DNA of 40,199 nucleotides from Macrostomum lignano (lineage: Eukaryota): NCBI GenBank assembly GCA_002269645.1, contig NIVC01004632.1:1-40199 (forward strand), read 5' to 3'. This document shows, piece by piece, positions 9,549 to 39,534 of this stretch. Under the pieces are notes generated by a model. The model searched no databases. It was not told the origin of the DNA and saw only the letters and a program-made list of their open reading frames with translations. Positions within the stretch are counted from its first letter, which is position 1. The number at the start of each line of letters is the position of its first letter. Made by a program: the position numbers and the translations under genes.

Positions 9549-9591
<43 letters not shown>

Positions 9592-9895
9592 GTGTCTGTC
9601 TGCCTGTGTGTCTGTCTGTCTTGTGTCTGTCTGTCTGTCTGTGTGTCTGTGTGTCTGGCTGACTGTCTGTCTGTCTGGCTGTCTGTGTGTGTGTCTGTGT
9701 CTGTCTGGCTGTGTGTCTGTCTGTCTGTCTGTCTGTCTGTGTGTCTGTTTGTGTCTGTCTGCCTGTCAGTCTGTCTGTCTGTCTGTGTGTCTGCCTGTGT
9801 GTCTGTCTGTGTGTCTGTCTGTCTGTCTGTGTGTCTGTCTGTCTGTCTGTGTGTGTGTCTGTGTGTCTGTCTGGCTGTGTGTCTGTCTGTCTGTT
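7905..9895. repeat. 2 kb compound (TCTG/TGTG/CCTG)n microsatellite
   Basis: Source of the CLSV/TDRQ artefact ORFs. Confidence 0.98.
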
Positions 9896-13390: not shown

Positions 13391-13668
13391 TTGAAAAAAT
13401 GGCTTCTAGTCCAAGTCTCTATAGAATTCTATGGTAAAAAGAATACAAGTATAAAGTATATTAAGCCTGGCTGACATCAGGCTTGTTGAAAAGGATAGAA
13501 AACATGTAGAAAAGGATACACTATAAGGATACGGACACTGCGTACGATTTTAAATAAGCATCGCACAGTATTGAGAGGGCGTCGAACTTCAAATTTGTGA
13601 AAATTACAATTGAAGGCCTAATCTGCAGTCTAGCGAGATAAAAGAATTCCAGTTTTTTAAGCTAAAGC

Positions 13669-17426: not shown

Positions 17427-19352
17427 TAGCTTTTTGCAGCCCATTTGGGCTTACACGCATTGAATTTAATCCAAGATATATTTGCTAAAGCAATTGAGCT
17501 GTTGTCTATGGTCGCAAGGTCTGACACTGCAGCATTTAATTTGGTCTAATAAGCATCAATTTGGGCTATAGCGGCTGTGAAACCCAATAACGAGTTACAG
17601 CTGTGTAATGCAATTTATTTGAGGAAACGTCACTGTACCAACACCAGGAAACGTAAAAAATGGAAATCTGATCAGCTCTAACAAGAACAAAAAGAGCATT
17701 TTAGCATGGTCAAGACTCCGCTGAGGAAGATGAAAAAAACGTGTTCAATTGAAATTTTCTCCTGCAATGCAAGCTGGCACGAAGCGCAGCATCTGCCGGT
17801 ACCAACCTGCACACTTTAAAGGTGTGATAGCGGCTGTAGCGGCCTCGGCAATGCGGTGAAGTACCAGTACTCTCCATTGACCAAGGGTGGTGTCAGGAGG
17901 CGGCTGATCAAGCTCTCGTTGGGTGGCCGGGTCACTGAGCTCCCGGTGGCAGTGGAGAGTGGAGAGAGTGGATAGTGGAGAGTATGGTGGCAACTGGATG
18001 AGTTGGATCCTGTCCTGATATACTTCCGGAATCCGGGCTCCATTATGAAACCGCGCACCATCCATAATGATGCGAACCTGTTGTTGGGCATCCAGTCCAT
18101 GAACTTCGAGTAGAGACTGCACCAGTTCATTGATGCACTGCTGAAACAGATCTCCGGTCATAGTCTGGCTCACAACTTTGTGGCAGACAAGTCCAATGGA
18201 TGGTGAAATCGCTTGCAGTACATTCACTTGATGGCCTCGCTGAGAATGAACGGTGCGCCGTACACGCTGACCGCGGCGACCACAACCTTGCGTCCTCCGA
18301 GTCCAAATGTTGAATCCAGTCTCGTCCAGATACATTAGATGAACCTCAAGAGCCGTTAGCCATTCGGCAAACTCCCGCCTTCTCGCAACCGTCTGCGGGC
18401 TGTTGCGTACCACTGGAATGTCTGCGTCTCTACCAAGAATTTTCAGTGTTATCAGTCGCTTTTCCAGAGCTCTGCTGATAGTCGAAATGCTGACAACCAA
18501 GTGAAACTGTTCGTCCAACTTCTGCTTCATTTGCTGCAACGTCAACAGAGGGTTTGTCTCAATTGCATCAAGTAGCAGTTGGACCTGAGGCTCTTGCAAC
18601 TTGCTTTGGCGATTGCCGCCCCTTCGTAGACGATCTCTTCTGCCAGTGGTTTCTACGCGCTGACGGATGCTGTACACTGTCTTTTCTTTGACGTTCAGCA
18701 TCCTATCAATGTCCTTTGGGTGCTCACCTCTGTCGAGTGCTTCGATCACAAGCCCATGGCGTTCGTTCGACAGTCTAGCATACGGTCCACGATTCTGAGG
18801 CAGATCTTGCTCCTCCTCCGCAGTAACAAATGAAGCATTGTATAGCAATTTGACGATCATTATTTGTAGTTTTTATGCGTTACAATTCATTGTTTGTTTG
18901 CCATTCGGCATTGAACCTAGTCTTGTCTATGGTAATCCTCAATGCTAATGTCGTCAAATAGGCTAGAGAGAAGGGTATGAATACACTCTACCATAGCATA
19001 CGATTTGATCGTCCAATAGCGATACAATGAAAAGAATCAGCGGTCCCAGTGCGTGACAACGATTTGTCTATGGCTCGCGCCTACCGGCGCTCGCCAGACA
19101 ATCGTTGTCACGCACTGGGACCGCTGATTATTTATCCATTGCTTCCATCATCACTGCTTGTATCGGTCATGGCTAAATTAAAATCTAGGGTTGAAACTAT
19201 AGAGCCGCTATGGACCAAATTGATGCTTATTAGACCAAATTAAATGCTGCAGTGTCAGTCCTTGCGACCATAGACAACAGATCAATTGCTTTAGCAAATA
19301 TATCTTGGATTAAATTCTATGCGTGTAAGCCCAAATGGGCTGCAAAAAGCTA
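17427..19352 (-). mobile_element. Nested ITm (IS630/Tc1/mariner) transposon with ~150 bp TIRs and TA target duplication
   Basis: 17427-17575 and ~19203-19352 are near-identical inverted repeats (TAGCTTTTTGCAGCCCATTTGGG...); TA at 17425-26 and 19353-54. Confidence 0.92.
17745..18860 (-). CDS. IS630/Tc1-like DDE transposase, 371 aa, apparently lacking the third catalytic residue
   Basis: HTH-like N-terminus, YLDETGFN, IIMDGARFHN, LPPYSP; the usual NPIE motif after PYSP is absent. Confidence 0.88.
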   Translation of the reverse strand: MIVKLLYNASFVTAEEEQDLPQNRGPYARLSNERHGLVIEALDRGEHPKDIDRMLNVKEKTVYSIRQRVETTGRRDRLRRGGNRQSKLQEPQVQLLLDAIETNPLLTLQQMKQKLDEQFHLVVSISTISRALEKRLITLKILGRDADIPVVRNSPQTVARRREFAEWLTALEVHLMYLDETGFNIWTRRTQGCGRRGQRVRRTVHSQRGHQVNVLQAISPSIGLVCHKVVSQTMTGDLFQQCINELVQSLLEVHGLDAQQQVRIIMDGARFHNGARIPEVYQDRIQLIQLPPYSPLSTLSTLHCHRELSDPATQRELDQPPPDTTLGQWRVLVLHRIAEAATAAITPLKCAGWYRQMLRFVPACIAGENFN

Positions 19353-19354
19353 TA

Positions 19355-20372
19355 CTTCGTAGCATGGTCTTTTGACTTAACCACAGCATTGCACCGCCTA
19401 GGCATGCTGTCCACCAGCTTCTGGCACACTTCTGCCAGCTCACGAGTCCTCAATGATACATTGATACAGTACAGCTGATCAAGGGAAGCTGGCTGCTGCT
19501 TCTGGATGTCTCACTCGACCCAGTTCCACAGATTCTCGATCGTATTGAGGTCTGGTGACTGTGCTGACCAGTCCATGGTACGGATGTTGTTCTCAGCAAG
19601 ACATGCCTTCACAAACTTGGAGATGTGCTTCGGGATCGTTGTCCTGCTGAAACTGGCAGCTGTGCACTGCACCCAGTGGCAGCGCATCTGCTGCCTCTGG
19701 TAGGTGGCTGCTGAGGATGTCACGGTACTTCTGACTGTCCATGATGCCCTCAATGCGAGTTATTGGCCCAGGTCCAGCACTGGAGAATGCAGCCCACACC
19801 ATGACATTGCCACCTCCATGCTTCATGGTACCAAAGGTGCACCTGGGATCGAATTCCTCACCAGCTCGGCGGCGCACATACTGGCGGCCATCAGAATCAG
19901 TGCGGGAAAATTTGCTCTCGTCACTCCAGATGACCTTGGCCCAGTCCTGGGGGTGTCCAGCTTGCATGCTGCTTCGCCCAGTTCAAGCGCTGCTTCCGGT
20001 TTTTGTCGGAGATAAATGGCTTCTTCCTAGCAATGCGGCCGTGCAGTCCGGCAGCTACCAAACCGTGGCGGAAAGTCATGGGGTGCAGCTGGACACCAAA
20101 AGTTCACGGCTGATGTCCACAGCGGTGAGCCGACGGTTGGACTCGGGCATTCGCACGATGCGGCGATCCAGTCGGAGGTCAGCTTTCGGTGCCCTGCCAG
20201 GTCTTGGGGCACAGCCTGTGCTGCCAGTGCTGCTGAAACGCCTGTGTGCTTGCTGGACGCAGGTTTTCAACTTCCTCAGCTGCGTGGCTATGGCACGCTG
20301 GGAAACTCCTTGGTCGAACAGGGCCTTGATTTTCCTACACGACTCAGGCGATAGAGCTCTGCCTTTCCCTAT
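19355..20372 (-). pseudogene. Tc1 transposase pseudogene of the outer element
   Basis: (ATA)GKGRALS..RPGRAPK..ARKKPFIS..VIWSDESKF..KHGGGNVMVWAAF..FQQDNDP..SPDLNTIENLW..SMPRRC..TKY; start codon mutated and several frameshifts. Confidence 0.92.
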
Positions 20373-20934
20373 TCTAGGAGAGTTCGAGATAATTTTTCTT
20401 TGAGTAATATTGAATTAGATGTTTTGGACTAACAGAATCAGCAGGGCCACTTTTAAGGCACCTTTTAGACCAATTAATTAAGTGGTCTTATTACTGTGTG
20501 ACTTATTAAATTCGAAAGTGAGACAAGGGACTACAATTAAACACACTCAATTGCGAGTAATTATCCAACACATCACTGATTTAATTAATTGATAACAGGG
20601 TTATCTATAGCTGAATAGATAAAAATGCTCCCACAATCTGTGTAGGATATGCAATCAAAATTTCGAATTAATTTTAGGTGGTCTTAATTCATTGTGCGCC
20701 ACTGTGTCTAAACATATTCCGCGGTAAAAAATTTTCAGGACCGCCGCTTACCTACCTACTGAAAGTAATATTTCTAAGGACTTGACTCGCAAAGCCATCA
20801 GTGGTTTTTCATGTTCCCTATGATAAATGTTGATGAAAGTATCACAAGAATGTTATTTGCTTTCCTCAGGGCGTTACACTCGCTACTTATAGGAATCAGG
20901 TTACAGAAGACAAAAAAGGAGACAAAAGTCATTC

Positions 20935-21222
<288 letters not shown>

Positions 21223-21311
21223 AGTTCAGCAGGACAATGTGGCACATGCAGTTCCGCTATCCAGTCAGGTTCCAGTGCTACGAAAGCGGTTACTGAGATT
21301 CCAAACCAGCG

Positions 21312-21557
21312 CAACTGGCAGCCCAGGTGAAGAGCATCCTCTCTGTAATTGCGTCTCTAACTGATCCACCCCCGTGTCTCTCAGGTGCATTTTCCTCGCT
21401 TTGAGTGCGTATTGGTGCTTCAGCTGCCACCTGAGTGCCCAGGTGGTATTGCTGCTATTCGTCGGTGAAAAAGATTTCAAAGGAAACCGCGTAGGCAGAT
21501 GAAAAGAGAACTACAGAAAAAAAATTCCAGCATCGTTTACATTTTGCACGCCACCTG
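21312..21557. promoter_or_regulatory. E-box cluster upstream of the neuropeptide gene
   Basis: CAGGTG/CACCTG at 21324, 21382, 21428, 21440, 21552, plus CAGCTG 21421, CAGATG 21496, CAACTG 21312. Confidence 0.55.
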
Positions 21558-21641
21558 AGACACCGCAAAATTTCTTTGATTTCTATAATACAGAACCGAT
21601 ACTAACAGAGCTGTGGTTCTAGGCCCTTTGATCTGCTTGTC

Positions 21642-21676
21642 TATAAAGGCAACAACTCGGAGCGAGAATTTCATTC
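21642..21676 (+). promoter_or_regulatory. TATA box plus initiator of the neuropeptide gene
   Basis: TATAAA at 21642-47 and TCATTC at 21671-76 (A 31 nt after the first T), 85 nt before the ATG. Confidence 0.7.
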
Positions 21677-21757
21677 GCCCAGACTCCCTACTCTCTCTTG
21701 TTGTCTTCTCAATAACTGGACAGAGTTTTTCTGTATCAACTGCAAATAGCACTCGAG

Positions 21758-22629
21758 ATGAGCAGCATTGGCTGGGCGTTCGCTCTGCTCTGTCTGGCAA
21801 CGGTGCTTTCGGCTCTGCCAGCTGGCCGCTATGAGAATCTGGAACTGACGGTGAGAGGTCCAAGATTAGTTTAACAATCGCCAAGATCAGTTTAACAATC
21901 GCCAAGATTAGTTTAACAATCGCGAAGATTGGTTTAACAATCGCCTAGATTAGTTTAACAATCGTGAAGATTAGTTTAACAATCGCCAAGATTAGTTTAA
22001 CAATCGCCTAGATCAGTTTAACAATCTCCAAGATTGGCTTGACAATCTCCAAGATTAGTTTAACAATCGCCTAGATTAGTTTAACAATCGCCTAGATTAG
22101 TTTAACAATCGCCTAGATTAGTTTAACAATCGCCTAGATTAGTTTAACAATCGTGAAGATTGGTTTAACAATCGCCAAGATTAGTTTAACAATCACCAAG
22201 ATTAGTTTAACAATCGCCTAGATTGAGTTTAACAATCACCAAGATTAGTTTAACAATCGCCTAGATTGAGTTTAACAATCGCCTAGATTGAGTTTAACAA
22301 TCGCCAAGAGTAGTTTAACAATCGCCTAGATTGAGTTTAACAATCGCCAAGATTAGTTTAACAGTCGTCAAGATTGGTTTAACAGTCTTTAAAACTAGTT
22401 TTGCAATGGTTTAGCAATTCTGTGATATTTTTTGCAATAATTTCAGCTGACCGACGTGAAGCACGAGCTGAAGTATGCCGAGGCTACTCATAACCTGCCA
22501 AAAGGAATCCTGCAGAAGTTGATCCCGTCAGTCGTGCTGACATCGACTGGCCTCGACAAGAGAGGCGGGCGTCGGTACAGCCTTTGCTGGGGGGTGTACC
22601 ACCCGGTGGCCTGCATCGGTGTACAGTAA
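21758..22629 (+). CDS. Secreted neuropeptide precursor, 91 aa, join(21758..21850,22447..22629); predicted cyclic peptide (GGRR)YSLCWGVYHPVACIGVQ
   Basis: Signal peptide MSSIGWAFALLCLATVLSA; phase-0 intron GTGAGA...TTTCAG; KR and RR convertase sites before a C-terminal two-Cys peptide. Confidence 0.88.
21860..22390. repeat. 21-22 bp minisatellite CAAGATTAGTTTAACAATCGC in the neuropeptide intron
   Basis: About 24 copies starting ~10 nt after the donor. Confidence 0.95.
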
Positions 22630-22731
22630 GCTGTACACTCATTTCGTCAAAAGACAATCGACAGCAGTTTAAGCTGTCTCGATTTAAAAAGAAACACTTT
22701 AACCCTTAAAATCCACAGGTATTTTAATATT

Positions 22732-22950
22732 GTGACCATGGACAACTGACGTACAAAGGACGCTTTACTAGGTTTTAGAAATGAGGTGGAGCCAGTAAGG
22801 AACGTATGTTTATCGTATCGCCATTGAATTCAGCAGTTTTACCATAGACTAAATCAGTTTGAGAAAAAGCAGATTCGTAATGCCCTACCATCTATGCCTC
22901 CAACATGTAGGTTTAGAGTCCTTCCTTTTACTGCAGTTGTCCATGGTCGC
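22732..22950. mobile_element. MITE-like element, ~220 bp
   Basis: Inverted ends GTGACCATGGACAACTG / CAGTTGTCCATGGTCGC; a related copy lies at ~13254-13390; no clear TSD. Confidence 0.6.
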
Positions 22951-23664
22951 GATCGGCTATTTTTAGAACTATTTAGAATAGAAAGCACTCTGGTCTCTGT
23001 CAGCCCAATACACGAGGTAATAAATATATAACTTTATATTAACACCTCCCTGCATAAACTTTATTCCAATCTATATTTGATTACCTGATTAATATAACCA
23101 AGAACAAAGTTCAGAGAAACTATGATAAGCTATCCTATACTATACCTGCACACAGAACTCGTAAAATATAAATATATATACTGAAGCAGTAGGTTCTCCT
23201 CTAACTGTTGTGATTTAGCAGTCCCAGGCATTCATAAATCAAAAAGCATCGTGACTGTGACGAGTTCGTTATTTCTGGCAGTTGATTAGATTATTGTTTT
23301 GTTTTATTCTTACCCTTGACGCCAAGGTCAAATCCGGTGACAATCATCGACAGTGACAGGCCAGATACGCAGCAAGCGCATACCATGAGTCTTAGTCAGG
23401 AACTACATGTAGTAGCAGTCTGTAGAGTTTGTAAATAATTTTTTTTAATAAACTGCATGTAGCTTTCGACCTTGTAACAGTGTCTATTGCCAGTTTTTTT
23501 AGGAAAACGATGCTTAAAATAAAAAAGCACCAAGCGCTGAAAGCCTGCTATCTAGCCTAAGACATCAGCACCCCTGTGAGCCTTGGCATCAAAACCTCCC
23601 TTTAAGGCTAAGCCATGGCTTAATACTAGCTTTTTATTTTATGCTTACCAGCAACTCCCAATCG

Positions 23665-24330
23665 ACCCTTGACATCTCAGCAATTCCCCCCGTGAGCCTG
23701 GCATCTCAGCAATTTCCCCCGTGAGCATTGACATCTCAGCAATTCCCCTCGTGAGCCTGGCATCTCAGAAATTCCCCTCGTGAGCCTGGCATCTCAGCAA
23801 TTCCACTCGTGAGCCTGGCATCTCAGCAATTCCCCCCGTGAGCCTGGCATCTCAGCAATTCCCCTCGTGAGCCTGGCATCTCAGCAATTCCCCTCGTGAG
23901 CCTGGCATCTCAGAAATTCCCCTCGTGAGCCTGGCATCTCAGCAATTCCCCTCGTGAGCCTGGCATCTCAGCAATTCCCCTCGTGAGCCTGGCATCTCAG
24001 CAATTCCCCTCGTGAGCCTGGCATCTCAGCAATTCCCCTCGTGAGCCTGGCATCTCAGCAATTCCCCTCGTGAGCCTGGCATCTCAGCAATTCCCCCCGT
24101 GAGCATTGACATCTCAGCAATTCCCCCCGTGAGCACTGGCATCTCAGCAATTCCCCCCGTGAGCATTGGCATCTCAGCAATTCCCCCCGTGAGCATTGAC
24201 ATCTCAGAAATTCCCCCGTGAGCATTGACATCTCAGCAATTCCCCCCGTGAGCATTGACATCTCAGCAATTCCCCCCGTGAGCACTGGCATCTCAGCAAT
24301 TCCCCCCGTGAGCATTGGCATCTCAGCAAG
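23665..24330. repeat. 29-30 bp minisatellite GCATCTCAGCAATTCCCCYCGTGAGC(CTG/ATTG)
   Basis: About 22 copies in two subtypes. Confidence 0.96.
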
Positions 24331-24550
24331 TCAAGATCGGCGACGAGTGAGTCACCAACGCGGCAACGTGGCCTAGTTCGTCCAAGATTAGTTTGCGCCG
24401 TCTACTACGAAGACGGCGACTCCAACTGGCTGGCCGCATCAGCGCCGAGTCGCACTGCCCACACGAGGTGCTGCTGCTGACGCTGCAGACACGACAGGCG
24501 CGCACTCGGCGTTTCGTCGACAGCCTGCTGAACAAATGTGACGCCGCTCT
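24330..24550 (+). mobile_element. Decayed 3' fragment of an RTE-like non-LTR retrotransposon
   Basis: One frame reads KIGDE*VTNAA..LLRRRRLQLAGRISAESHCPHEVLLLTLQTRQARTRRFVDSLL, resembling the RRL.xAGHV.R tail of RTE-clade RTs (recalled similarity). Confidence 0.55.
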
Positions 24551-24716
24551 CTTTAGATGGGTTTTTCACACACTGATCATGTCCTTGACTGCCACTCTCC
24601 CTGGCTGTCACATGTACATGCATCTGATAGCTGTCCTTGCATTTTAGAAACTAAATCGTTTCCAAGACTTTAGAAACGTTTTTTTGTACAAATTTTGCAT
24701 TAGGAGAGCATGCACT

Positions 24717-24948
24717 GGGGGTGTTTCTCGAAACTCACGTAAGTTTTATGGTAAGTTAGATCGTAAGAAAGAAATTTACGTGTAGCGTAAGTTTGCTCGT
24801 AAGACGCTTTCTCAAAACTCACTTAGACTTTGCGTGGCTTATGCTGTTCGTAAGTCGTATCTGAAACGAAAAGTTGCATGTCTATGGTCATAAATCTGTA
24901 AATATCTTTACTTAGTCTATCGTAAGTTGCTTTCGAGAAAGACCCACC
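24717..24948. mobile_element. MITE-like element, possibly PIF/Harbinger-type
   Basis: Inverted ends GGGTGTTTCTCGAAA / TTTCGAGAAAGACCC; internal CGTAAG repeats. Confidence 0.45.
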
Positions 24949-25531
24949 TTCGATAAAGTTTAACTTGACTTGGCTTGACTAAAGCTTCACGCAAGGACGA
25001 CTTAAGTAGAAGGACGGGAAACCTCGTTTCTTAGAAAATTTTTGAAGACACTTTTTTCCCGAAAAAATACACTGCGGAGATAGGAAATTTTCATTTTTTC
25101 AGCACAAAAATTGCTATAACTTTTGATAGGAGGCAGCTCCAGTGTTCATCTTTTGATATCTTGTGCCTTTTTTATTGCTCTATCGATATTTATAAGCTTT
25201 CCGTTCAGAAAATTAGGATTCAGAAAAACAGCACCGTAACAACTTGGTGATTTGAAGAGATCAACGCCCCTACGATACTGCGTTCAAGTAAATGTTTTAA
25301 TATATACCCGGTAATTATACGTTGCCAATTTAGACTACACAGAGAGAAGTACATGTTAGACTAATAAATATTTAAATCGTAAAATCTCCTCTATAGCCCG
25401 AAATTGTGGACATACGCTCGTAAAAGAAACAGCAGCATAAAAGAGACGTATGTGCACAGCGTGTACAGAACGGCGTGTGGCAGTGTCTAACTGACAAAAA
25501 CATGTCACGTTATTGGCGTAGCGGCCAGCTA

Positions 25532-25558
25532 TGCGGTGACCCTTAAAAGGGCCGTTTT
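25532..25558 (-). terminator. Histone-type 3' stem-loop AAAAC-GGCCCT-TTTA-AGGGTC-ACCGCA
   Basis: Matches the replication-dependent histone 3' element (6 bp stem, 4 nt loop, A/C-rich flanks) with one G-U pair; no histone ORF upstream. Confidence 0.65.
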
Positions 25559-26039
25559 AGTCCCAAAATAAGTTGAAGTCAATTCTTGTAAGCGGATTTT
25601 GTAGCGGAGCACTTGGCGATAAAGGCAGGAACTGCCGTAGTTGTCTTTATTGTTAATATCAGTATTAAGTTTGGTTGTTACTGGCAATAAACAGACTATA
25701 GCTTTCTGGGCACTGGCGGCTGCAGCAATGGGTTGAATATAATTTGGATATGAAGTCAAGTGGCAGGCGAATGACACAATGGCGACGTGACGTGAGCAGT
25801 GGCTATGAGCACAGTGAAGGCGGTGAAACGTAGTGGTGAGTTGGCGTCGGTCGTGGCGTGAAACAGTCAAGTAAGTGTGTGAGCAGGCTGGCCCAGACAG
25901 AAGGGCCGTGGTGAGAAATAAGGAGGCTCGAGGCAGCCAGACAAACAGATAAGACAGCTAAGAGGCCGCAGGGAAGGAAACAAGGGACAAGCGGGGAGAG
26001 ACGAAAAAGAGAGAGCGAGGGGAGGGTGGAGTGCCCGCC

Positions 26040-26190
26040 GCCAGGCGGGGGGGTTTAATAAAAGAGCGCAGAGGGGGGTAGCGCGAACACGAGTGATTTC
26101 ATTGGCTGGCGAGAGAACTTAAAATTATCGATCGTGCCAATTTTATACGGTGGCGAGAGAGGATAGCAAAATATACAATGAATTATAAAT
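26040..26190. promoter_or_regulatory. Candidate bidirectional promoter between the two stem-loops
   Basis: GGCGGGG at 26044, TATA-like TTTATTAAA (-) ~26054-62, CCAAT (-) 26101-05, CCAAT (+) 26137-41, TATAAAT (+) 26184-90. Confidence 0.35.
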
Positions 26191-26301
26191 TGCCACAAAA
26201 TCGTTGGGCACTACTACAAGTAAACGTCGCAATAAACGAATGGAAAAGTTTAGTTGAAGCGGTGAAACTGAAGGGTTGAATGACTATGGAAAACCAGCAG
26301 T

Positions 26302-26327
26302 CCAACGGCCCTTTTCGGGACCACCTT
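26302..26327 (+). terminator. Degenerate histone-type 3' stem-loop CCAAC-GGCCCT-TTTC-GGGACC-ACCTT
   Basis: Same AACGGCCCTTTT core and ACC 3' flank as the minus-strand copy; the stem has one mismatch and one wobble. Confidence 0.5.
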
Positions 26328-27569
26328 AAACTGACAACGTCACAAACAAATACAGCATATAGCTCGTACTTTTGTTAATCTCTGGCTCACTAGATCGGGG
26401 TGGATAATTTTCAATGTCCGTGGGTGAAGCAGTAATTTTGGTGAGGCCGGGGTGAGCCTTAGCCATAAGTGGCAAGATCCCTAGGATCCCCGAATTCCTG
26501 GAGTGTCTCACTGGCAAGGCACACTATTTCTGGGGCTCAAGCTGCTGCAACCGTCAAAAACAGCAAGAGGCCTGATCAGGTGGTCGTTTGCCAGCTCCTT
26601 CACGGGTTAAGTTCACCTAGCGCAATAATGGCAGCTCAAAGCAGCACAGAGAGCGCGGTACTCTTCCTTAAATACGGGCAGCTCACCAGCGATACAAAAT
26701 CGTCGGCAAGAAGTCTCAGGCCGCACCACAACCCTCCGAGCCGAGTACGCCTTCGGTGACAATCTCATCAGAGACCTTGTTTACGTCAGAATCGAATCAT
26801 ACTATAGCTTATCAAATCTTATCTGGAATTGTGTTCGACTTTGTTACTCATTCTCTTGTACCGTACCTGTGACTATTGGATAAGTTTTGGTTGGACTCGC
26901 CGGTGATAGGCAAATAGGAATCAACCGTTTTAAAACATCCGAATCGCTCCAGTATTTGTCTTGGGCGTGACTATTTGGCCGTATATACATGTATATTACA
27001 CCGTGGAACTGGATTGTGCGAAAGTTTCAAAAAAGGACGCTTGAGCTTTTTACAATGTTAATGCTCTCACACTCTTACTGCTCATAAATCACAGCCATCC
27101 TCGATTCCAATAAACAGAAAAGTAGCATTAATTAAGCTTTTTGAGCAATATTTTAAAGCTCCAACTTCCCGGCGATTCCTACTTGTATATGTGCTGCATA
27201 ACAAAGTCTTCTTTAAATATTCAAGAAAGTTTTTCTCAAGTTTTTCGTTAAGATAATCAACACATGTTTAAAAAACAAACAATAGTTTAATTAAGTTGTT
27301 TTGAAATGTTTTTCACAATTTCAATTTTCTATTTTCAATGAAACGAGACTTTTAGAAAGCAGTTAATCTTTCAGAAAAAACAGGATTGATTGTGACTATG
27401 TTAGTGATTACACTGTGTGTTACATTTCCATTTCATAAAATAGTTGAATCTAATCAATTAAATTTATCTCGTGGTTGCTAGATTCCCTTTTACAGACTAA
27501 TCGGACTTAGAGAAAGTTTCTAATCACTATTTGATTGTTTTAAAACGTTTCTAGTGACTGTCTGGTATA

Positions 27570-30500
27570 ATGTCGTATTCACAGCTGAGCCAGGATGTTA
27601 CTGAACGTTATTCAAATGTCTCCAATTTTTTTCGCAGTGGTCACATAGAAGACATTGACAAAATTGGTAAGCAGGAAAGCTAGAAGCTTTAAAGTATTGC
27701 TATTTTCATCAATAAATTTAAACAACAAATAAATATAGTCTAGACTCAACAAATATTTTTGCAATAATTAATTTTTGATAGTATTTGACTGGTTTATTTA
27801 GCAGTTAATTTGTCAATAATAAAATTTAAAATGATAATATAAATCCAAAGCTATGCTATAGCTATGGTTTATATTTTGTCAGTTGTTATTGTTATAGCAA
27901 AAAAAAGTATTGAAAGAATATAGTTATAAAAATCTATAAAAATGTTGTTTCAATGAATGTTTTTCATTGATATATTTTCAAAAATTTTTTTAATACATAT
28001 GTTTGACAAACTAGTCATATGCATATCTTTAAAAAGTTATTTCAAAAGTTCATAACTATTAGTATACTTCATCATTTATAGTATACTTATATTTTTTAAG
28101 CAGAAAATTTTCTCTGCTTTCACATATTGTGATTTTTTTCCTTTCATATATAATTTTATCTTTTTATTTATAGAAAAAAACAACACATTCATTTTTCATC
28201 TTATCCATTTTTTGGCTTATAGTATAACCATTTTTGCTTATAGTATTGTTATTATAGTAACTTTATATAAAAATTCACAATGGTTATTTTTATAGTCAAC
28301 ACCTAAAATATATATATATATACTTGTGGTGTCAATCATAAGACTCTAAGAGACTATAAATATAGTAATAAGAGATATCAAAACTTGTTTTTAATGCATT
28401 GATACTAAGTTAACTTTCTTGTCATCAACCATAGCTTATAACTAAATGCTTAGTATAATGAAATTTTCCTAATAAATATAAAAAAGCCATTCAGCTTTTT
28501 TTATTTAGTGACTATAAAAATAACAATTTTGATATTTATATAGTTTTGTTAAGTTAATCACTTCAGCTCAGATAGTATTCATTGTGTTAACCATAAAAAT
28601 AGCAATTTCACTATTTACATGGTCACCGTAACAATAACAAAAATCTTATATTTTATTGGGATTTAATATTTTGTAAGATTTAGAAGCAGTTTTTTTCTTT
28701 AAGCTTAAAACAATCAGGGTCAAATAAAATAATTTTAGTATGCTAAAGTAGGCATATTTTAGGCATATTTTAAATGCCTTTAAACAAAGAACCTATTATG
28801 GTGTTATAATTGATATTTTTTGAATATTTATTATTAATATTACTAAAAATTATCTATCTGTAAATCAACTAATATATAAACAGTGGTTTGTATAGCAATT
28901 ATATTCAGCACTTTTTCTGCTCACTTCTATCCATTTTATTATACAGGTATGTATGCAGCCACTAGTCAGCTACAGCAAAGGGCCAATGAGGTTCGGGCTA
29001 ACAGGGTGAATTGGCAATCATATTTGCAGTAAGTGAATTTCTATGACTTTGTTTTTTGTATGGTTTATTAATTCTCTTTTAACATATTGGGAGCAAGAAA
29101 GTTTTAATTATATAGGAGTAATTGCAATAGGGACTCATCTTATTAGTAGTTTAGTTGATATTTAGACATTTTTTTATTAATGAAAAAGACAATGAGATGT
29201 AGATCTAAGGTAGAGAGAGATAAAGGGTAAATTAATCAGATTCAGTTAGATGAAGGGAGAGTCAATGAGATGCAGGGAGTGAATGAGATGCAGGGAGAGT
29301 CAATGAGATGCAGGGAGAGTCAATGAGATGCAAGGAGAGTCAATGAGATGCAGGGAGAGTCAATGAGATTCAGGGAGAGTCAATGAGATGCAAGGAGAGT
29401 CAATGAGATGCAGGGAGAGTCAATGAGATGCAAGGAGAGTCAATGAGATGCAGGGAGAGTCAATGAGATGCAGGGAGAGTCAATGAGATGCAGGGAGAGT
29501 CAATGAGATGCAGGGAGAGTCAATGAGATGCAGGGAGAGTCAATGAGATGCAAGGAGAGTCAATGAGATGCAAGGAGAGTCAATGAGATGCAGGGAGAGT
29601 CAATGAGATGCAAAGAGAGTCAATGAGATGCAAAGAGAGTCAATGAGATGCAGGGAGAGTCAATGAGATGCAGGGAGAGTCAATGAGATGCAAGGAGAGT
29701 CAATGAGATGCAGGGAGAGTCAATGAGATGCAGGGAGAGTCAATGAGATGCAGGGAGAGTCAATGAGATGCAGGGAGAGTCAATGAGATGCAGGGAGTGA
29801 ATGAGATGCAGGGAGAGTCAATGAGATGCAGGGAGAGTCAATGAGATGCAAGGAGAGTCAATGAGATGCAAGGAGAGTCAATGAGATGCAGGGAGAGTCA
29901 ATGAGATGCAAGGAGAGTCAATGAGATGCAGGGAGAGTCAATGAGATGCAGGGAGAGTCAATGAGATGCAAGGAGAGTCAATGAGATGCAGGGAGAGTCA
30001 ATGAGATGCAGGGAGAGTCAATGAGATGCAAGGAGAGTCAATGAGATGCAGGGAGAGTCAATGAGATGCAAGGAGAGTCAATGAGATGCAAGGAGAGTCA
30101 ATGAGATGCAAGGAGAGTCAATGAGATGCAAGGAGAGTCAATGAGATGCAGGGAGAGTCAATGAGATGCAGGGAGAGTCAATGAGATGCAAGGAGAGTCA
30201 ATGAGATGCAGGGAGAGTCAATGAGATGCAGGGAGAGTCAATGAGATGCAGGGAGAGTCAATGAGATGCAGGGAGAGTCAATGAGATGCAAGGAGAGTCA
30301 ATGAGATGCAGGGAGAGTCAATGAGATGCAGGGAGAGTCAATGAGATGCAGGGAGAGTCAATGAGATGCAGGGAGAGTCAATGAGATGCAAGGAGAGTCA
30401 ATGAGATGCAGGGAGAGTCAATGAGATGCAGGGAGACACAGCCAGAGTAACTCAACCCCACATGCGCAGAGGCCAAATGATAGACCAGGCTGACTATGAC

Positions 30501-33500
30501 TTCATCGTGAAGCTGGAGTCCCGGGCCAGTCAACCGGAGCAGCGCAAGGCTCTGATAGACGAGAATTCCAGTCAGTTTGTTCGAACGATACTCGCCCTGC
30601 TGGCTAGAATCTCCAAGGAGCAGACTGTGCAGTACATCCTAACTCTGCTCGATGACCTGCTGCAGGAGGAAAAGCAACGCGTCGAGCTGTTCAAAGCTTA
30701 TTCCCAGCGACGCAGAGAGAGCGTATGGGCGCCGTTCTTTGGTATGCTGCACAGGCAGGATGGCTTCATTGTCAATCAGGCATCGAGAATCATCGCCAAA
30801 ATTGCCTGCTGGGGTAACCAGCTGATGGAGCACACTGAGCTGCTGCATTACCTGTCCTGGCTCAGGGAGCAGCTGCGACTGCCTGTAGGATTTTTAATTG
30901 TCTTCTCCGATGCTGTGTCTTCCCTATGATCCCAGTGTCTTCCTTATGATCCCAGAGTCTTCCTTATGATCCCAGTGTCTTCCTTATGATCCCAGTGTCT
31001 TCCTTATGATCCCAGAGTCTTCCTGGTGATCCCAGTGTCTTCCTTATGATCCCAGTGTCTTCCTTATGATCCCAGTGTCTTCCTTATGAACCCAGTGTCT
31101 TCCTTATGATCCCAGTGTCTTCCTTATGATCCAGAGTCTTCCTTATGATCCCAGTGTCTTCCTTATGATCCCAGTGTCTTCCTTATGATCCCAGTGTCTT
31201 CCTTATGATCCCAGAGTCTTCCTGGTGATCCCAGTGTCTTCCTTATGATCCCAGTGTCTTCCTTATGATCCCAGTGTCTTCCTTATGAACCCAGTGTCTT
31301 CCTTATGATCCCAGTGTCTTCCTTATGATCCCAGAGTCTTCTTATGATCCCAGTGTCTTCCTTATGATCCCAGTGTCTTCCTTATGATCCCAATGTTCCC
31401 TGTGATCTCAGTGTCTTCCTTATGATCCCAGAGTCTTCCTTATGATCCCAGTGTCTTCCTTATGATCCCAGTGTCTTCTTATGATCCCAGTGTCTTCCTT
31501 ATGATCCCAGTGTCTTCCTTATGATCCCAGTGTCTTCCTTATGATCCCAGTGTCTTCCTTAAGATCAGTGTCTTCCTTATGATCCCAGTGTCTTCCTTAT
31601 GATCCCAGAGTCTTCCCTATGATCCCAGTGTCTTCCTTATGATCCCAGTCTTCCCCACGATCCCGGTGTCTTCCCTATGATCCCAGTGTCTTCCCTATGA
31701 TCCCAGTCTTCCCCACGATCCCGGTGTCTTCCCCATGATCCCAGAGTCTTCCCCGTGATCCCAGTGTCTTTCACACGAGCATCATGAAGCCCATATGCAA
31801 TCCATATTATTCCAATGTCTCCCTGGCCTCACAGTGCTCTCTCTTGCTAACAACACCTTGCCGCTTTGAAATCCCCTCCGTAGTCGAACGAGTACATCCA
31901 AACAGTGGCCCGCTGCCTGCAAATGATGCTCAGAGTTGGGCCCTACAGACAGGCATTCTGCGACATTGACGGCATTGCCACCTTGGCCAGCGTTCTGTCA
32001 ACTAAGGTCAACTATCAGATCCAGTACCAGCTGGTGTTCTGCCTGTGGTGCCTCAGCTTCGATGCTGATATTGTTATGCGAATGAAGAAGTGAGTTTTAT
32101 TTATTCTGCAGTTTGCGGAAGAGTAGCGTTAGTTCTATTGGCGCTAAAGTCACGTATACGCTAAACTTGGCGCCACGATCTGTGTCTGCCAGTGGCACCG
32201 AATTTCGTGTGTGGATGGCGCCAAATTCAGTATGATAACGGCGCCAAATTTAGTATGTTGATGGCACCAGATTCAGTATGATAACGGCGCCAAATTCAGT
32301 ATGTTGATGGCGCCAAATTCAGTATGATAACGGCGCCAAATTTAGTATGTTGATGGCACCAGATTCAGTATGATAATAACGGCGCCAAATTCGTTATGTT
32401 GACGGCGCCAAATTCAGTATGATAACGGCGCCAAATTCAGTATGTTGATGGCGCCAAATTCAGTATTTTGATTGCGCCAAATTCGATATGTCAGTGGCGC
32501 CAAATTCAGTGTTTTGATTGCGCCAAATTCGATATGTCAGTGGCGCCAAATTCAGTATTTTGATTGAGCCAAATTCGATATGTCAGTGGCGCCAAATTCA
32601 GTATTTTGATTGCGCCAAATTCGATGTCAGTGGCGCCAAATTCAGTATGTTGATGGCGCCAAATTCAGTATGTTGATGGCGCCAAATTCAGTATGTTGAT
32701 GGCGCCAAATTCGGTATGATAATTTTTACATTGATAAGACGATAATTCGTCTATATCAACGTTTCCAGTATATTTTAGTTAAAATATAAACAAAATGAAT
32801 AAATATTCCTGCCGCCTACTGTTAGTAGCTGATAGCTCTCGTATATCAAGAGTAGCCGCTCTCTCTCCCGCGCAGGTACAATCTGATCCCAATCTGCGCG
32901 GACGTTCTGTGCGAATCCGAGAAAGAGAAAGTTAATCGCATTGTGTGCGCCTTCTTTCGGCACCTGCTTGAGAAGCCAACTGACTCAATGATGGTTAGGG
33001 AGAGCGCGCCCATGGTGCACTGCAAAGTGCTTAAACAGGTGCGAATGAGTATGATTTATTGCTTATCAACTGGGTGCTGGCATGTCAATTTTTTGCTAGA
33101 AAGTTACCCTCCATCCTGTAAGCTGTCAGTTCAGACTGTCACCCTCCATCCTGTAAGCTGTCAGTTCAGACTGTCACCCTCCATCCTGTAAGCTGTCAGT
33201 TCAGACTGTCACCCTCCATCCTGTCATCTGTCAGTTCAGACTGTCACCCTCCATCCTGTCATCTGTCAATTCAGACTGTCACCCTCCATCCTGTCATCTG
33301 TCAGTTCAGACTGTCACCCTCCATCCTGAAAGCTGTCAGTTCAGACTGTCACCCTCCATCCTGAAAGCTGTCAGTTCAGACTGTCACCCTCCATCCTGTA
33401 AGCTGTCAGTTCAGACTGTCACCCTCCATCCTGAAAGCTGTCAGTTCAGACTGTCACCCTCCATCCTGTAAGCTGTCAGTTCAGACTGTCACCCTCCATC

Positions 33501-35567
33501 CTATCCGCTGTCAGTTCAGGCTGTCACCCTCCATCCTATCAGCTGTCAGTTCAGGCTGTCACCCTCCATCCTATCAGCTGTCAGTTCAGGCTGTCACCCT
33601 CCATCCTGTAAGCTGTCAGTTCAGGCTGTCACCCTCCATCCTGTAAGCTGTCAGTTCAGGCTGTCACCCTCCATCCTGTAAGCTGTCAGTTCAGACTGTA
33701 ACCCTGCTCCCTGCTCACTCACCCGCCTCCAGGTGGAGCTGCTTGTGCAGAAAAAATACGACGATCCTGAGCACGAAGACGATTTACAGTTCCTGTTCGA
33801 ACGACTGAGCACTTCAATCCAAGATCTGAGCTCATTCGACGAATACGCCAGCGAATTGAAGGCGGGCCGACTCGAGTGGAGTCCGGTGCACAAGTCCGAG
33901 CGCTTCTGGCACGAGAATGCCACCAAGCTTAACGAGCGAAACTATGAACTGCTGAAGATCCTGGTTCGCCTGTTGGAGACTAGCAAAGACTCGCTCGTGC
34001 TCTGCGTTGCCGCTCACGATGTTGGAGAGTATGTTCGGCATTATCCCAGGGGAAAGACGTGAGTTATTGTACGCTTATGCTTTAGACATCTCATGTTCCC
34101 ATCTCAACATGAGAAATCCCACACTTCTAATCCCAAGATGAAAAATCTTAGACTTTAATCCCAACATGAGAAATCCCAAAATAAGAAATCCATACTCTAA
34201 TCCCAACACGAGAAATCCCAAACTCTAATCCCAACATGAGAAATCCCAAACTCTAATCCCAACATGAGAAATCCCACTCTAATCCCAACATGAGAAATCT
34301 CACACTTCTAATCCCAACATGAGAAATCCCAAGCTCTAATCCCAACATGAGAAATCTCACACTTCTAATCCCAGCATGAGAAATCCCATACTCTAATCCA
34401 AACATGAGAAATCCCAACTTCTAATCCCAACATGAAAACTTCCACATTCTAATCCCCACCTCGACATGAGAGATCTCACACATTTATCTCTCGCTAATTA
34501 AATGCGGTTTCACACAACTGCGCAGGGTTATTGAGCAGCTGGGCGCTAAAGAGCTGGTGATGAGGATGCTGACAAGCGACGATCCCAATGTTCGGTACAA
34601 CGCTCTCATTGCTGTGCAGAAGATCATGGTGCACAACTGGTCTGTTTTGGCATCATTTTGTCCTTGCTTGGTATAATTATTTTCATTCTTTCAAGGCCGT
34701 TTATCTTGTAGGTGGAGCTGTTAGACTGTCACCCTCTTCTGACTTGCTGTAGATTAGACTGTCACCATACTCTGACCTGCTGTAGATTAGACTGTCACCC
34801 TCTTCTGACCTGCTGTAGATTAGACTGTCACCATACTCTGACCTGCTGTAGATTGGACTGTCACCCTCTTCTGACTTGCTGTAGATTAGACTGTCACCCT
34901 CTTCTGACCTGCTGTAGATTAGACTGTCACCCTCTTCTGACCTGCTGTAGATTAGACTGTCACCATACTCTGACCTGCTGTAGATTAGACTGTCACCATA
35001 CTCTGACCTGCTGTAGATTGGACTGTCACCCTCTTCTGACTTGCTGTAGGTTAGACTGTCACCCTCTTCCGACTTGCTGTAAGTTAGACTGTCACCCTCT
35101 TCTGACCTGCTGTAGGTTAGACTGTCACCCTCTTCCGACTTGCTGTAGGTTAGACTGTCACCCTCTTCTGACCTGCTGTAGGTTAGACTGTCACCCTCTT
35201 CCGACTTGCTGTAGGTTAGACTGTCACCCTCTTCCGACTTGCTGTAAGTTAGACTGTCACCCTCTTCTGACCTGCTGTAGGTTAGACTGTCACCCTCTTC
35301 CGACTTGCTGTAGGTTAGACTGTCACCCTCTTCTGACCTGCTGTAGGTTAGACTGTCACCCTCTTCCGACTTGCTGTAGGTTAGACTGTCACCCCACTCT
35401 GACCTGCTGTAGATTATAAATACAGAAACAGACGATCAACCTACATTTCATTTCACTACACGCGCAGGGAGTACCTTGGCAAGCAGATTGAGGACAAGGC
35501 CAAGGCTGAGACTGGCGGTGGCGGCAAATCGGGCGGATCGCAGAGCCAGCAGGCTGTGAAATCTTGA
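27570..35567 (+). CDS. ATP6V1H: V-ATPase V1 subunit H, join(27570..27666 [first exon uncertain],28947..29028,30470..30884,31884..32089,32876..33038,33733..34058,34526..34639,35468..35567), ~500 aa
   Basis: [105 protein letters not shown]; all phases consistent (1503 nt). Confidence 0.96.
29260..30436. repeat. 20 bp minisatellite GAGAGTCAATGAGATGCA(G/A)G in ATP6V1H intron 2
   Basis: About 58 copies ending ~35 nt before the acceptor. Confidence 0.98.
30905..31775. repeat. 20 bp minisatellite GATCCCAGTGTCTTCCTTAT in ATP6V1H intron 3
   Basis: About 43 copies starting ~20 nt after the donor. Confidence 0.97.
32215..32715. repeat. ~23-25 bp minisatellite GGCGCCAAATTCAGTATGTTGAT in ATP6V1H intron 4
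   Basis: About 20 copies. Confidence 0.95.
33105..33705. repeat. 35 bp minisatellite CCCTCCATCCTGTAAGCTGTCAGTTCAGACTGTCA in ATP6V1H intron 5
   Basis: About 17 copies. Confidence 0.97.
34095..34460. repeat. ~31 bp minisatellite CTAATCCCAACATGAGAAATCCCACACTT in ATP6V1H intron 6
   Basis: About 11 degenerate copies. Confidence 0.92.
34718..35415. repeat. 36 bp minisatellite TTAGACTGTCACCCTCTTCTGACCTGCTGTAG.. in ATP6V1H intron 7
   Basis: About 19 copies; explains the [11 protein letters not shown] artefact ORF. Confidence 0.97.
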
Positions 35568-39530: not shown

Positions 39531-39534
39531 GTGA

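What the first reader, a model, noticed from the sequence alone, without database searches (positions are those of the whole stretch)
25532..26327. Divergent pair of histone-type 3' stem-loops with no histone genes: candidate SLBP-terminated non-coding RNAs
Seen: AAC-GGCCCT-TTTN-RGGRYC-ACC occurs on the minus strand (25538-53) and the plus strand (26307-22), pointing away from a central region with a GC box, two CCAAT boxes and TATA-like motifs. This is the layout of a divergent histone pair, yet none of the frames I read encodes a histone. Implied RNAs are ~490 nt (-) and ~110 nt (+). Established: this stem-loop, bound by SLBP, is nearly exclusive to replication-dependent histone mRNAs and confers non-polyA 3' ends and S-phase control. 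Inference: cell-cycle-regulated ncRNAs or SLBP decoys, a histone locus whose coding parts were replaced, or a mobile element that captured histone ends.
Basis: partly seen in the sequence, partly recalled or inferred. Interest (0 to 1): 0.82.

Follow-up and report, generated by a model that had tools for sequence, protein, structure and literature searches.

The report
Degenerate histone-type stem-loop pair, no histones
Two damaged copies of the hairpin that normally ends histone messenger RNAs point outward from a promoter-like core in an animal genome, with no histone or other gene between them, and they are more likely a dead remnant of a small gene pair than a new class of regulated non-coding RNA.

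Summary
AAC-GGCCCT-TTTA-AGGGTC-ACC lies on the minus strand (25535-25556) and AAC-GGCCCT-TTTC-GGGACC-ACC on the plus strand (26304-26325). Between them are CCAAT, TATA and GC motifs, and no histone coding sequence occurs anywhere in the window. The pair is far beyond chance.

The functional reading is not supported.
- **Scores:** Rfam Histone3 gives 20.6 and 19.6 bits, against a gathering score of 34. Twenty-six genuine stem-loops from control loci scored 35.5-43.3.
- **Stem defects:** one copy has a G·U at pair 2; the other has a C×A mismatch plus a U·G. None of 144 control stem-loops showed either defect, although the search pattern allowed them.
- **Downstream element:** neither copy has a purine-rich element after the stem.
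- **Spacing:** 753 nt between stems is shorter than all 18 real divergent pairs (993-1580 nt).

Simulation excludes a core-histone pair decayed by point mutation. My best reading (about 0.5) is an inactive remnant of a compact divergent pair of genes with histone-type ends, not histones, possibly a dispersed unit.

The controls gave an unexpected precedent. In metagenomic eukaryote contigs, canonical histone stem-loops end transposase genes and small non-histone gene pairs. Functional non-coding RNAs remain possible (about 0.15) and need RNA data.

The parts
25535..25556 (-). Degenerate histone-type 3' stem-loop, AAC GGCCCT TTTA AGGGTC ACC. The stem-loop proper is 25538-25553. It has six pairs, and pair 2 is G·U instead of G-C.
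   Evidence: Sequence. Rfam RF00032 gives 20.6 bits against a gathering score of 34. The hairpin forms in the minimum-energy fold of the minus strand. One substitution separates it from the canonical AACGGCCCTTTTAAGGGCCACC seen 53 times in control loci.
26304..26325 (+). Degenerate histone-type 3' stem-loop, AAC GGCCCT TTTC GGGACC ACC. The stem-loop proper is 26307-26322. It has a C×A mismatch at pair 3 and U·G at pair 6.
   Evidence: Sequence. Rfam RF00032 gives 19.6 bits against 34. The hairpin is not formed in the minimum-energy fold, where the 5' arm pairs with AAGGGUUG at 26271-26278. Two substitutions separate it from the canonical AACGGCCCTTTTCAGGGCCACC seen 91 times in control loci.
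26034..26189 (.). Promoter-like core. Palindromic GC boxes at 26034-26049. TTTATTAAA (-) at 26054-26062. CCAAT (-) at 26101-26105. CCAAT (+) at 26137-26141. TATAAA (+) at 26184-26189. Direct repeat TGGCGAGAGA at 26107-26116 and 26151-26160.
   Evidence: Motif coordinates and direct repeat D4. CCAAT-to-TATA spacing is 43 nt leftward and 47 nt rightward. Promoter activity is inferred, not shown.
25533..26030 (-). Putative leftward unit of about 500 nt. It is C/T-rich, G-poor, contains no ATG, and is less structured than shuffled controls.
   Evidence: Composition is A99 C162 G73 T143, with 0 ATG in 477 nt; 0.9% of mononucleotide shuffles also had none. The ATG-free stretch runs 26102 to 25503. 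The folding z-score is +2.1. No coding frame ends before the stem-loop, and the 142-codon open frame runs through it. The transcription start is inferred from the TATA-like motif only.
26215..26327 (+). Putative rightward unit of about 110 nt. A 33-codon ORF (26178-26279) stops 27 nt before the stem-loop but starts upstream of the inferred transcription start.
   Evidence: ORF list and translations. No Pfam match and no match in the large protein collection.
25489..25497 (+). Left copy of a 9-nt direct repeat, AACTGACAA. It is a possible target-site duplication bounding an 831-bp insert (25498-26328).
   Evidence: Exact 9-mer. The chance of such a repeat between the two 60-nt flanks is about 0.015 by my own arithmetic. 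This was a post hoc observation and is only suggestive.
26329..26337 (+). Right copy of the 9-nt direct repeat AACTGACAA. It begins 6 nt after the plus-strand stem, about where a processed histone-type 3' end would lie.
   Evidence: The link to a processed 3' end is inference.

Best explanation
The locus is a non-coding, probably inactive remnant of a compact bidirectional gene pair. Each arm once ended in a histone-type 3' processing signal, a stem-loop bound by SLBP. The ancestral unit was most likely not a core-histone pair. It resembles the small non-histone and mobile-element genes that carry canonical histone stem-loops in other eukaryotes, and it may have arrived here as a dispersed 0.8-kb unit. 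Shown: both stem-loops carry stem-weakening substitutions, no downstream purine-rich element is present, no reading frame is recognisable, and the spacing is too short for two histone genes. Inferred: the CCAAT/TATA core once drove, and may still weakly drive, divergent transcription. Any transcripts are now unlikely to be cleaved and protected efficiently by the SLBP/U7 pathway.
For: (1) The motifs are truly histone-type and non-random. They nevertheless score 15-23 bits below 26 genuine stem-loops with the same AACGGCCC core. (2) A metagenome scan used a pattern that permitted the window's variants. It returned 144 stem-loops, all with perfect stems and none with AAGGGTC or CGGGACC. (3) Control stem-loops show a purine peak at +11 to +15 after ACC (79% purine), and 85 of 142 carry an HDE-like pentamer. 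Neither window copy has one. (4) The stems are 753 nt apart, whereas 18 real divergent pairs span 993-1580 nt. (5) No histone or other protein remnant was found. (6) A real H2A-H2B pair mutated by 7% or 19% was detected 15 of 15 times. The stem-loops differ from canonical by only 3 of 44 positions, so point-mutational decay of a core-histone pair is excluded. (7) There is precedent. Canonical stem-loops follow DDE transposases, P2RX7_C, GDSL and unknown ORFs at 12-40 nt. Two of these lie inside TIR-bounded Tc1-like elements. In L088 and L041 a divergent pair of small non-histone genes has stems 993-1005 nt apart. (8) A 9-nt direct repeat brackets the unit. (9) A G7·U20 wobble, as in the minus copy, weakens SLBP binding (PMC10388802).
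Against: All three substitutions fall in the 3' arms, while the 12 nt AACGGCCCTTTT (5' flank, 5' arm and loop U's) are identical in both copies. Under random placement this has a probability of about 0.02 (my arithmetic), which could reflect selection on the SLBP-contacting half. G7, the only base-specific SLBP contact (PMC10388802), is kept in both copies. At about 7% divergence a recent relic should still show long ORF fragments of its parent genes, and none is recognisable; lineage-specific parents would be undetectable, though. No second copy, no terminal inverted repeats and no homologous sequence were found. The dispersed-unit origin therefore rests on the 9-nt repeat alone. Some lineages, nematodes for example, process histone stem-loops without U7 or an HDE, so the missing HDE is not decisive (background knowledge).
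Confidence: 0.5

Rival explanations
1. The locus is a working bidirectional unit. It makes an RNA of about 500 nt and one of about 110 nt, both non-coding, whose 3' ends are formed and protected through variant histone-type stem-loops.
For: Topology and promoter motifs sit at sensible distances. The leftward unit is ATG-free over 599 nt, with P about 0.009. The 5' flank, 5' arm and loop are perfectly kept in both copies, and all changes lie in the 3' arm. The minus hairpin forms in the minimum-energy fold. G7 is retained, and G·U at pair 2 weakens SLBP binding but does not abolish it (PMC10388802). Non-histone use of this signal exists elsewhere.
Against: Scores are sub-threshold. The stem defects were never seen in 144 functional-looking controls. 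There is no HDE-like element. The plus hairpin is out-competed by an alternative pairing. The leftward RNA is less structured than shuffles. No stem-loop pair lies upstream of V-ATPase H in the nearest available relative. In human cells SLBP binds only histone mRNAs, and the one non-histone stem-loop locus was not expressed (PMC4604434).
Confidence: 0.15
2. The whole 831-bp segment (25498-26328) is one copy of a dispersed non-autonomous or retroposed element, flanked by a 9-bp target-site duplication. It derives from an element whose genes use histone-type 3' ends.
For: AACTGACAA flanks the unit exactly, and the right copy starts 6 nt after the stem, about where a processed histone-type end lies. 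Complete TIR-bounded Tc1-like elements carry a canonical histone stem-loop after the transposase (L055, L057). Harbinger, piggyBac and ISL2EU-type transposases also have one.
Against: There are no terminal inverted repeats around the unit and no second copy in 40 kb. No similarity to any stem-loop-bearing control element exists outside the hairpin itself. The two Tc1-like ORFs in the window have no stem-loop. A 9-mer repeat has roughly a 1-5% chance probability once the post hoc search is allowed for.
Confidence: 0.15
3. The locus is a decayed pseudogene pair of core histones (H2A-H2B or H3-H4) whose coding regions have drifted beyond recognition.
For: The divergent layout with a CCAAT/TATA core is that of histone pairs. 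The leftward unit of about 500 nt is the size of a histone mRNA.
Against: A real pair mutated by 7-19% is always detected, and about 40% divergence is needed to hide it. At 40% divergence, two 22-nt motifs would keep 21 of 22 or more and 20 of 22 or more identity with probability about 3e-7 (my arithmetic). The 753-nt spacing is at least 240 nt too short. tblastn and Pfam found nothing. Only a version in which the coding sequences were deleted or replaced survives, and that merges with the best explanation.
Confidence: 0.04
4. The two hairpins are chance palindromes. The central motifs are simply the promoter of a neighbouring gene, for example a non-coding first exon of the V-ATPase H gene 4 kb downstream.
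For: Each hit alone (about 20 bits) would be expected roughly once per several hundred megabases. CCAAT, TATA and GC motifs are individually common. V-ATPase H is a housekeeping gene on the plus strand starting at 30426.
Against: Two Histone3-type hits sit within 800 nt, in mirror orientation, each with correct 5' AAC and 3' ACC flanks and a UUUN loop. The per-family expectation is about 1e-4 each in the window, and 0 of 100 shuffles gave two pattern matches.
Confidence: 0.04

Closest known systems
Histone 3' UTR stem-loop (Rfam RF00032, the SLBP-binding element of replication-dependent histone mRNAs)
   Same: The A-rich 5' flank ending in AAC, the 5' arm GGCCCU, the 4-nt loop UUUN and the 3' flank ACC all match. 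The 12-nt core is identical to 144 canonical copies in control loci.
   Different: Scores are 20.6 and 19.6 bits against a gathering score of 34, and against 35.5-43.3 for controls. The stems carry a G·U at pair 2, or a C×A mismatch plus a U·G. There is no histone coding sequence upstream and no purine-rich downstream element.
Divergently transcribed histone gene pairs (H2A-H2B, H3-H4) with a shared CCAAT/TATA promoter
   Same: Outward-pointing stem-loops surround a short promoter-like core with one CCAAT and one TATA-like motif per direction.
   Different: No histone reading frames are present. Stem-to-stem distance is 753 nt, against 996-1580 nt in 16 real histone pairs. Decay by point mutation is excluded by simulation.
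Non-histone genes ending in canonical histone stem-loops, seen here in metagenomic eukaryote contigs (Tc1/mariner, PIF/Harbinger, piggyBac and ISL2EU transposases; P2RX7_C and GDSL proteins; the L088/L041 small-gene pair)
   Same: A histone-type 3' signal is used outside histone genes. L088 and L041 show the same divergent, compact two-gene layout.
   Different: Those have intact ORFs that stop 12-40 nt before perfect stem-loops scoring above threshold, and some are bounded by long TIRs. The window unit has no recognisable ORF, damaged stems, no TIRs, and no sequence similarity to them outside the hairpin. I found no paper describing this class in the searched library.
Unexpressed histone pseudogenes and orphan stem-loop matches in the human genome
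   Same: These are stem-loop-like sequences that are not bound by SLBP or not expressed (PMC4604434).
   Different: The human cases are single elements or recognisable histone pseudogenes, not a paired promoter-centred unit lacking any histone remnant.

Membership tests
Rfam RF00032 Histone3 stem-loop | Covariance-model score at or above the curated gathering score (34 bits) | tested here: not met
   Scores are 20.6 and 19.6 bits, and no hit reached gathering threshold. Positive controls scored 35.5-43.3 bits.
Rfam RF00032 Histone3 stem-loop | Six consecutive Watson-Crick pairs: G-C, G-C, three Y-R pairs, then U-A | tested here: not met
   The minus copy has G·U at pair 2. The plus copy has C×A at pair 3 and U·G at pair 6. 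Zero of 144 control stem-loops carry these variants.
Rfam RF00032 Histone3 stem-loop | Four-nucleotide loop with U at positions 1 and 3, an A-rich 5' flank and an ACC 3' flank | tested here: met
   Loops are UUUA and UUUC, 5' flanks are AAAAC and CCAAC, and ACC follows both stems.
Rfam RF00032 Histone3 stem-loop | Located about 20-60 nt downstream of the stop codon of a replication-dependent histone gene | tested here: not met
   No histone coding sequence is present. In controls, histone stop codons lay 21-59 nt upstream.
Rfam RF00032 Histone3 stem-loop | Purine-rich histone downstream element for U7 snRNA about 10-15 nt after the cleavage site | tested here: not met
   No HDE-like pentamer occurs at +5 to +30 in either copy. 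Controls show 79% purine at +11 to +15, and 85 of 142 carry such a pentamer. The U7 sequence of this animal is unknown.
Rfam RF00032 Histone3 stem-loop | Binding by SLBP and cleavage 4-5 nt after the stem | not testable with these tools
   This needs RNA 3'-end data or binding assays. The literature indicates that G7 is the key contact and that G·U at pair 2 weakens binding (PMC10388802).
Divergent core-histone gene pair | Two histone-fold reading frames between the stem-loops | tested here: not met
   tblastn at E up to 100 finds nothing credible. Simulation shows detection would be certain at the divergence implied by the stem-loops.
Divergent core-histone gene pair | Stem-to-stem distance of about 1.0-1.6 kb | tested here: not met
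   The window pair is 753 nt apart, against 996-1580 nt in 16 histone pairs.
Divergent core-histone gene pair | Shared bidirectional promoter with CCAAT and TATA elements | tested here: inconclusive
   The motifs are present at plausible spacing. They are short and common, and activity was not tested.
Mobile-element or non-histone genes with histone-type 3' ends (class seen in control loci) | Intact non-histone ORF stopping 12-40 nt before the stem-loop | tested here: not met
   The only candidate is a 33-codon ORF stopping 27 nt before the plus stem-loop. No frame ends before the minus stem-loop, and no homology was found.
Mobile-element or non-histone genes with histone-type 3' ends (class seen in control loci) | Element boundaries (TIRs and/or target-site duplication) and multiple copies | tested here: inconclusive
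   No TIRs were found and there is no second copy in the window. A 9-nt direct repeat flanks the unit. Genome-wide copy number cannot be tested here.

The most novel reading that the evidence does not exclude
The locus is an active bidirectional gene for two non-coding RNAs whose ends are made by histone-type processing through relaxed stem-loops (G·U, or a mismatch tolerated). That would make them the first SLBP-dependent, potentially S-phase-coupled non-coding RNAs, perhaps acting as SLBP sponges or as regulators of the neighbouring genes.
Probability: 0.12. Interest if true: 0.75.

Novelty: new variant of a known kind. Interest (0 to 1): 0.35.

Why it matters
If the relic reading is right, the locus itself is a minor curiosity. 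It still shows that histone-type 3' ends in this animal were once attached to something other than core histones. The controls run for this check point the same way. In environmental eukaryote DNA, close to half of the canonical histone stem-loops retrieved (66 of 144) do not follow a core-histone gene. Many of these end transposase genes, two of them inside complete TIR-bounded elements. That would mean mobile elements can borrow the replication-coupled, poly(A)-independent expression route of histones, which I did not find described in the searched literature. If the two damaged hairpins in the window are still processed, they would be the first non-coding RNAs shown to use this pathway, and the sequence tolerance of SLBP could then be tested in vivo.

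Tried and rejected
- **Rfam at gathering threshold:** no hit in the window.
- **Histone remnants:** tblastn with five canonical histones found nothing. The only weak hit (H2A N-terminal tail against the purine-rich plus strand, E = 0.63) is low-complexity basic sequence with no histone fold.
- **Inverted duplication or TIR element:** similarity between the two halves and flanks does not extend beyond the 22-nt motif. No TIRs were found in 20400-30400. A Helitron-type 3' hairpin was considered and dropped by eye, because CTRR is followed by C rather than T and no 5' TC end is present.
- **Other copies:** none in the window.
- **Pol III small RNA for the plus unit:** a TATA box with a TTTT terminator inside the loop was considered. 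It cannot explain the paired arrangement or the minus unit, which has internal T runs, and no Rfam family matched.
- **Synteny:** the closest available relative's V-ATPase H locus (Logan SRR24652123, 59% protein identity) has no stem-loop pair upstream. It is too distant to be decisive.
- **Organism identification:** this failed. The best protein identities are 53-59% for V-ATPase H and 70% or less for SPTLC1, so the source is a metazoan with no close relative in the collection.
- **Last large protein search:** I used concatenated open frames of the locus plus two control ORFs.
- **Taxon of the control elements:** cluster look-up gave no names.
- **Literature:** searches for transposon genes with histone stem-loops found nothing relevant.

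Full report
**1. What is there**

On the minus strand, 25535-25556 reads AAC GGCCCT TTTA AGGGTC ACC. On the plus strand, 26304-26325 reads AAC GGCCCT TTTC GGGACC ACC. Shuffles give a mean of 0.05 matches, and 0 of 100 shuffles gave two.

They are also the only Rfam Histone3 (RF00032) hits when the whole window is scanned permissively: E = 0.29 and 0.68 across 4227 families. For that one family alone this is about 7e-5 and 1.6e-4. A single 20-bit hit would be expected by chance roughly once per several hundred megabases. Two within 800 nt, mirror-oriented and each with correct flanks, are not chance.

The similarity between the two sides stops at the 22-nt motif. This is therefore not an extended inverted duplication.

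**2. The centre and the two arms**

The core carries several promoter-like motifs:
- GGCGGG on both strands at 26034-26049
- TTTATTAAA (-) at 26054-26062
- CCAAT (-) at 26101-26105
- CCAAT (+) at 26137-26141
- TATAAA (+) at 26184-26189
- a duplicated TGGCGAGAGA at 26107-26116 and 26151-26160

CCAAT-to-TATA spacing is 43 nt leftward and 47 nt rightward. This would place transcription starts near 26030 (-) and 26215 (+). This part is inference from short, common motifs.

The leftward unit is C/T-rich and has no ATG over 599 nt; 0.9% of shuffles of the 477-nt unit also had none. It is less structured than shuffled sequence, with a z-score of +2.1. No frame terminates before its stem-loop.

The rightward unit holds only a 33-codon ORF. 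That ORF starts upstream of the inferred transcription start and stops 27 nt before the stem-loop.

**3. No histones and no other protein**

tblastn with H1, H2A, H2B, H3 and H4 at E up to 100 finds nothing credible in the locus or the window. Pfam finds nothing in any open frame of 45 codons or more between 24330 and 27400. A search of the large protein collection with the concatenated frames was empty, but it hit a candidate cap and is only a weak negative.

**4. Are the stem-loops functional-looking?**

Both score below the family's gathering score: 20.6 and 19.6 bits against 34. For calibration I scanned public metagenome contigs with AACGGCCCTTTTMRGGRYCACC, a pattern that admits the canonical sequence and both window variants.

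- **Stem integrity.** All 144 matches had perfect stems (CAGGGCC 91, AAGGGCC 53). None had AAGGGTC or CGGGACC.
- **Scores.** Twenty-six stem-loops in 16 of these loci scored 35.5-43.3 bits, all above threshold.
- **Downstream element.** Controls show a purine-rich peak at +11 to +15 after ACC (79% purine), and 85 of 142 carry an HDE-like pentamer. Neither window copy has one.
- **Folding.** The plus-strand hairpin is not part of the minimum-energy fold, because its 5' arm pairs with an upstream AAGGGUUG.

In standard numbering the minus copy has G7·U20. The plus copy has C8×A19 and U11·G16. G7 is the only base-specific SLBP contact, and a G7·U20 wobble weakens SLBP binding (PMC10388802). Both elements are therefore damaged versions of the signal, although the SLBP-contacting 5' half is intact in both.

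**5. Not a decayed core-histone pair**

The stem-loops differ from canonical at 3 of 44 positions, about 7% (upper confidence limit about 19%). I mutated a real H2A-H2B pair (L062) and embedded it in the window.

| Divergence | Detected by tblastn |
|---|---|
| 7% | 15 of 15 |
| 19% | 15 of 15 |
| 30% | 10 of 15 |
| 40% | 1 of 15 |

At 40% divergence, two 22-nt motifs would stay this intact with probability about 3e-7 (my arithmetic).

The stems are also too close together. They are 753 nt apart, whereas 18 real divergent pairs in the control loci span 993-1580 nt. Sixteen of those enclose H3-H4, H2A-H2B or H2B-H3.

**6. An unexpected precedent from the controls**

Of the 144 canonical stem-loops:
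- 65 lay at most 185 nt downstream of a histone coding sequence, 64 of them core histones and one H1; the distances listed are mostly 21-59 nt
- 13 were at contig edges
- 66 had no core-histone coding sequence upstream

Among 48 ORFs of 70 aa or more ending just before such a stem-loop, 3 are linker histones. The rest include DDE_3 (4), DDE_Tnp_4 (2), DDE_Tnp_1_7, DDE_Tnp_IS1595, P2RX7_C (4), GDSL lipase (2), zinc-finger, RING and MADF proteins, and about 25 with no Pfam match. The stop-to-stem distance is typically 12-40 nt.

L055 and L057 are complete Tc1-like elements whose long TIRs enclose both the transposase and the stem-loop. In L088 and L041, two small non-histone genes are divergently transcribed, and each ends in a stem-loop that meets the perfect-stem descriptor. 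The two L088 hairpins score 39.8 and 39.1 bits; L041 was not scored with Rfam. The stems are 993-1005 nt apart. This is the same architecture as the window locus, but intact.

These families are multi-copy in ENA, JGI and Logan assemblies, and their taxon is unknown. I found no paper describing this. In human cells SLBP targets are histone mRNAs only (PMC4604434).

**7. Interpretation**

The best fit (about 0.5) is an inactive, non-coding remnant of a compact divergent pair of genes that used histone-type 3' ends and were not core histones.

A 9-nt direct repeat, AACTGACAA, brackets the unit at 25489-25497 and 26329-26337. The right copy starts 6 nt after the stem. This hints that the 831-bp segment arrived as a unit. 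The hint is post hoc, with a chance probability of about 1-5%. There are no TIRs, no second copy, and no similarity to the control elements outside the hairpin.

Three facts argue against a pure relic: all three substitutions sit in the 3' arms (p about 0.02), G7 is retained, and the leftward unit is ATG-free. I therefore keep a functional non-coding RNA reading at about 0.15. Chance and point-mutational histone decay are each at or below about 0.04.

**8. Context**

The window is from a metazoan with no close relative in the protein collection. It is rich in minisatellites. The locus lies between two Tc1-like ORFs (17.7-20.1 kb) and a V-ATPase H gene whose exons run from 30426 to at least 34652.

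The nearest available relative's V-ATPase H locus has no stem-loop pair upstream, but it is too distant to weigh much.

**9. Verdict**

The headline interpretation is not supported by the sequence evidence, and the fallback alternatives are favoured. The locus is of modest interest in itself. RNA 3'-end data and a genome-wide copy count would settle it.

Noticed in passing
L055:1-1837 and L057:36-2749 (also L048, L051, L100, L035, L082, L064, L040, L050): Transposase genes of Tc1/mariner, PIF/Harbinger, piggyBac and ISL2EU types end 14-121 nt before a canonical histone-type stem-loop; those included in the Rfam control set scored 35.8-38.6 bits. In L055 and L057 the stem-loop lies inside long TIRs, so it is part of the element. 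I found no description of this in the searched literature.
   Followed up: partly
L088:642-1716 and L041:338-1375: A divergent pair of small non-histone protein genes (about 125 aa and 75 aa), each ending in a perfect-stem histone stem-loop, with stems 993-1005 nt apart; the two L088 hairpins score 39.8 and 39.1 bits. Related ORFs ('MEQALNKLRS...', 'MERIEFKFNRV...CPACRGRLH') recur on several contigs from the same metagenome series. The taxon is unknown.
   Followed up: partly
L064:1236-1353: Three canonical histone stem-loops lie in tandem within 120 nt, downstream of a piggyBac-type transposase gene.
   Followed up: no
L025, L042, L034, L085: Multi-copy ORFs with a P2RX7_C domain each stop 20-40 nt before a canonical histone stem-loop. 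Their clusters hold 10-12 members in ENA, Logan and MGnify assemblies.
   Followed up: partly
window 25820-25829, 25855-25864, 26259-26268: The 10-mer GCGGTGAAAC / GGCGTGAAAC occurs three times on the plus strand inside the unit (GTTTCACSGC on the minus strand). This is unlikely by chance, and its meaning is unknown.
   Followed up: no
window 30426-34652 (+): A V-ATPase subunit H gene. Exons were recognised at 30426-30929, about 31929-32090, 32880-32960, 33802-34056 and 34524-34652. Long minisatellites lie just upstream of and between the exons.
   Followed up: partly
window 17745-18860 (-) and 19352-20076 (-): Two Tc1/mariner-like transposase reading frames, one of them an intact 371-aa ORF. 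Neither is followed by a histone-type stem-loop.
   Followed up: partly
window 4300-6015 (+) and 39012-39545 (+): Exons of a serine palmitoyltransferase 1-like gene (70% identity or less to any database protein) and what looks, by eye only and not searched, like a protein-kinase exon (possibly WNK-like). The source animal has no close relative in the protein collection.
   Followed up: partly
window 100-40154 (45 TRF rows), e.g. 7909-9894, 13668-14430, 29248-30436: An exceptional density of micro- and minisatellites with periods of 4-36 nt, up to 2 kb long. They create many spurious long ORFs and a spurious mir-434 hit at 38417-38496.
   Followed up: no
window 27000-29000: A 2-kb block of very low G+C content (24-28%) lies immediately right of the locus, unlike the rest of the window (about 40-55%).
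   Followed up: no
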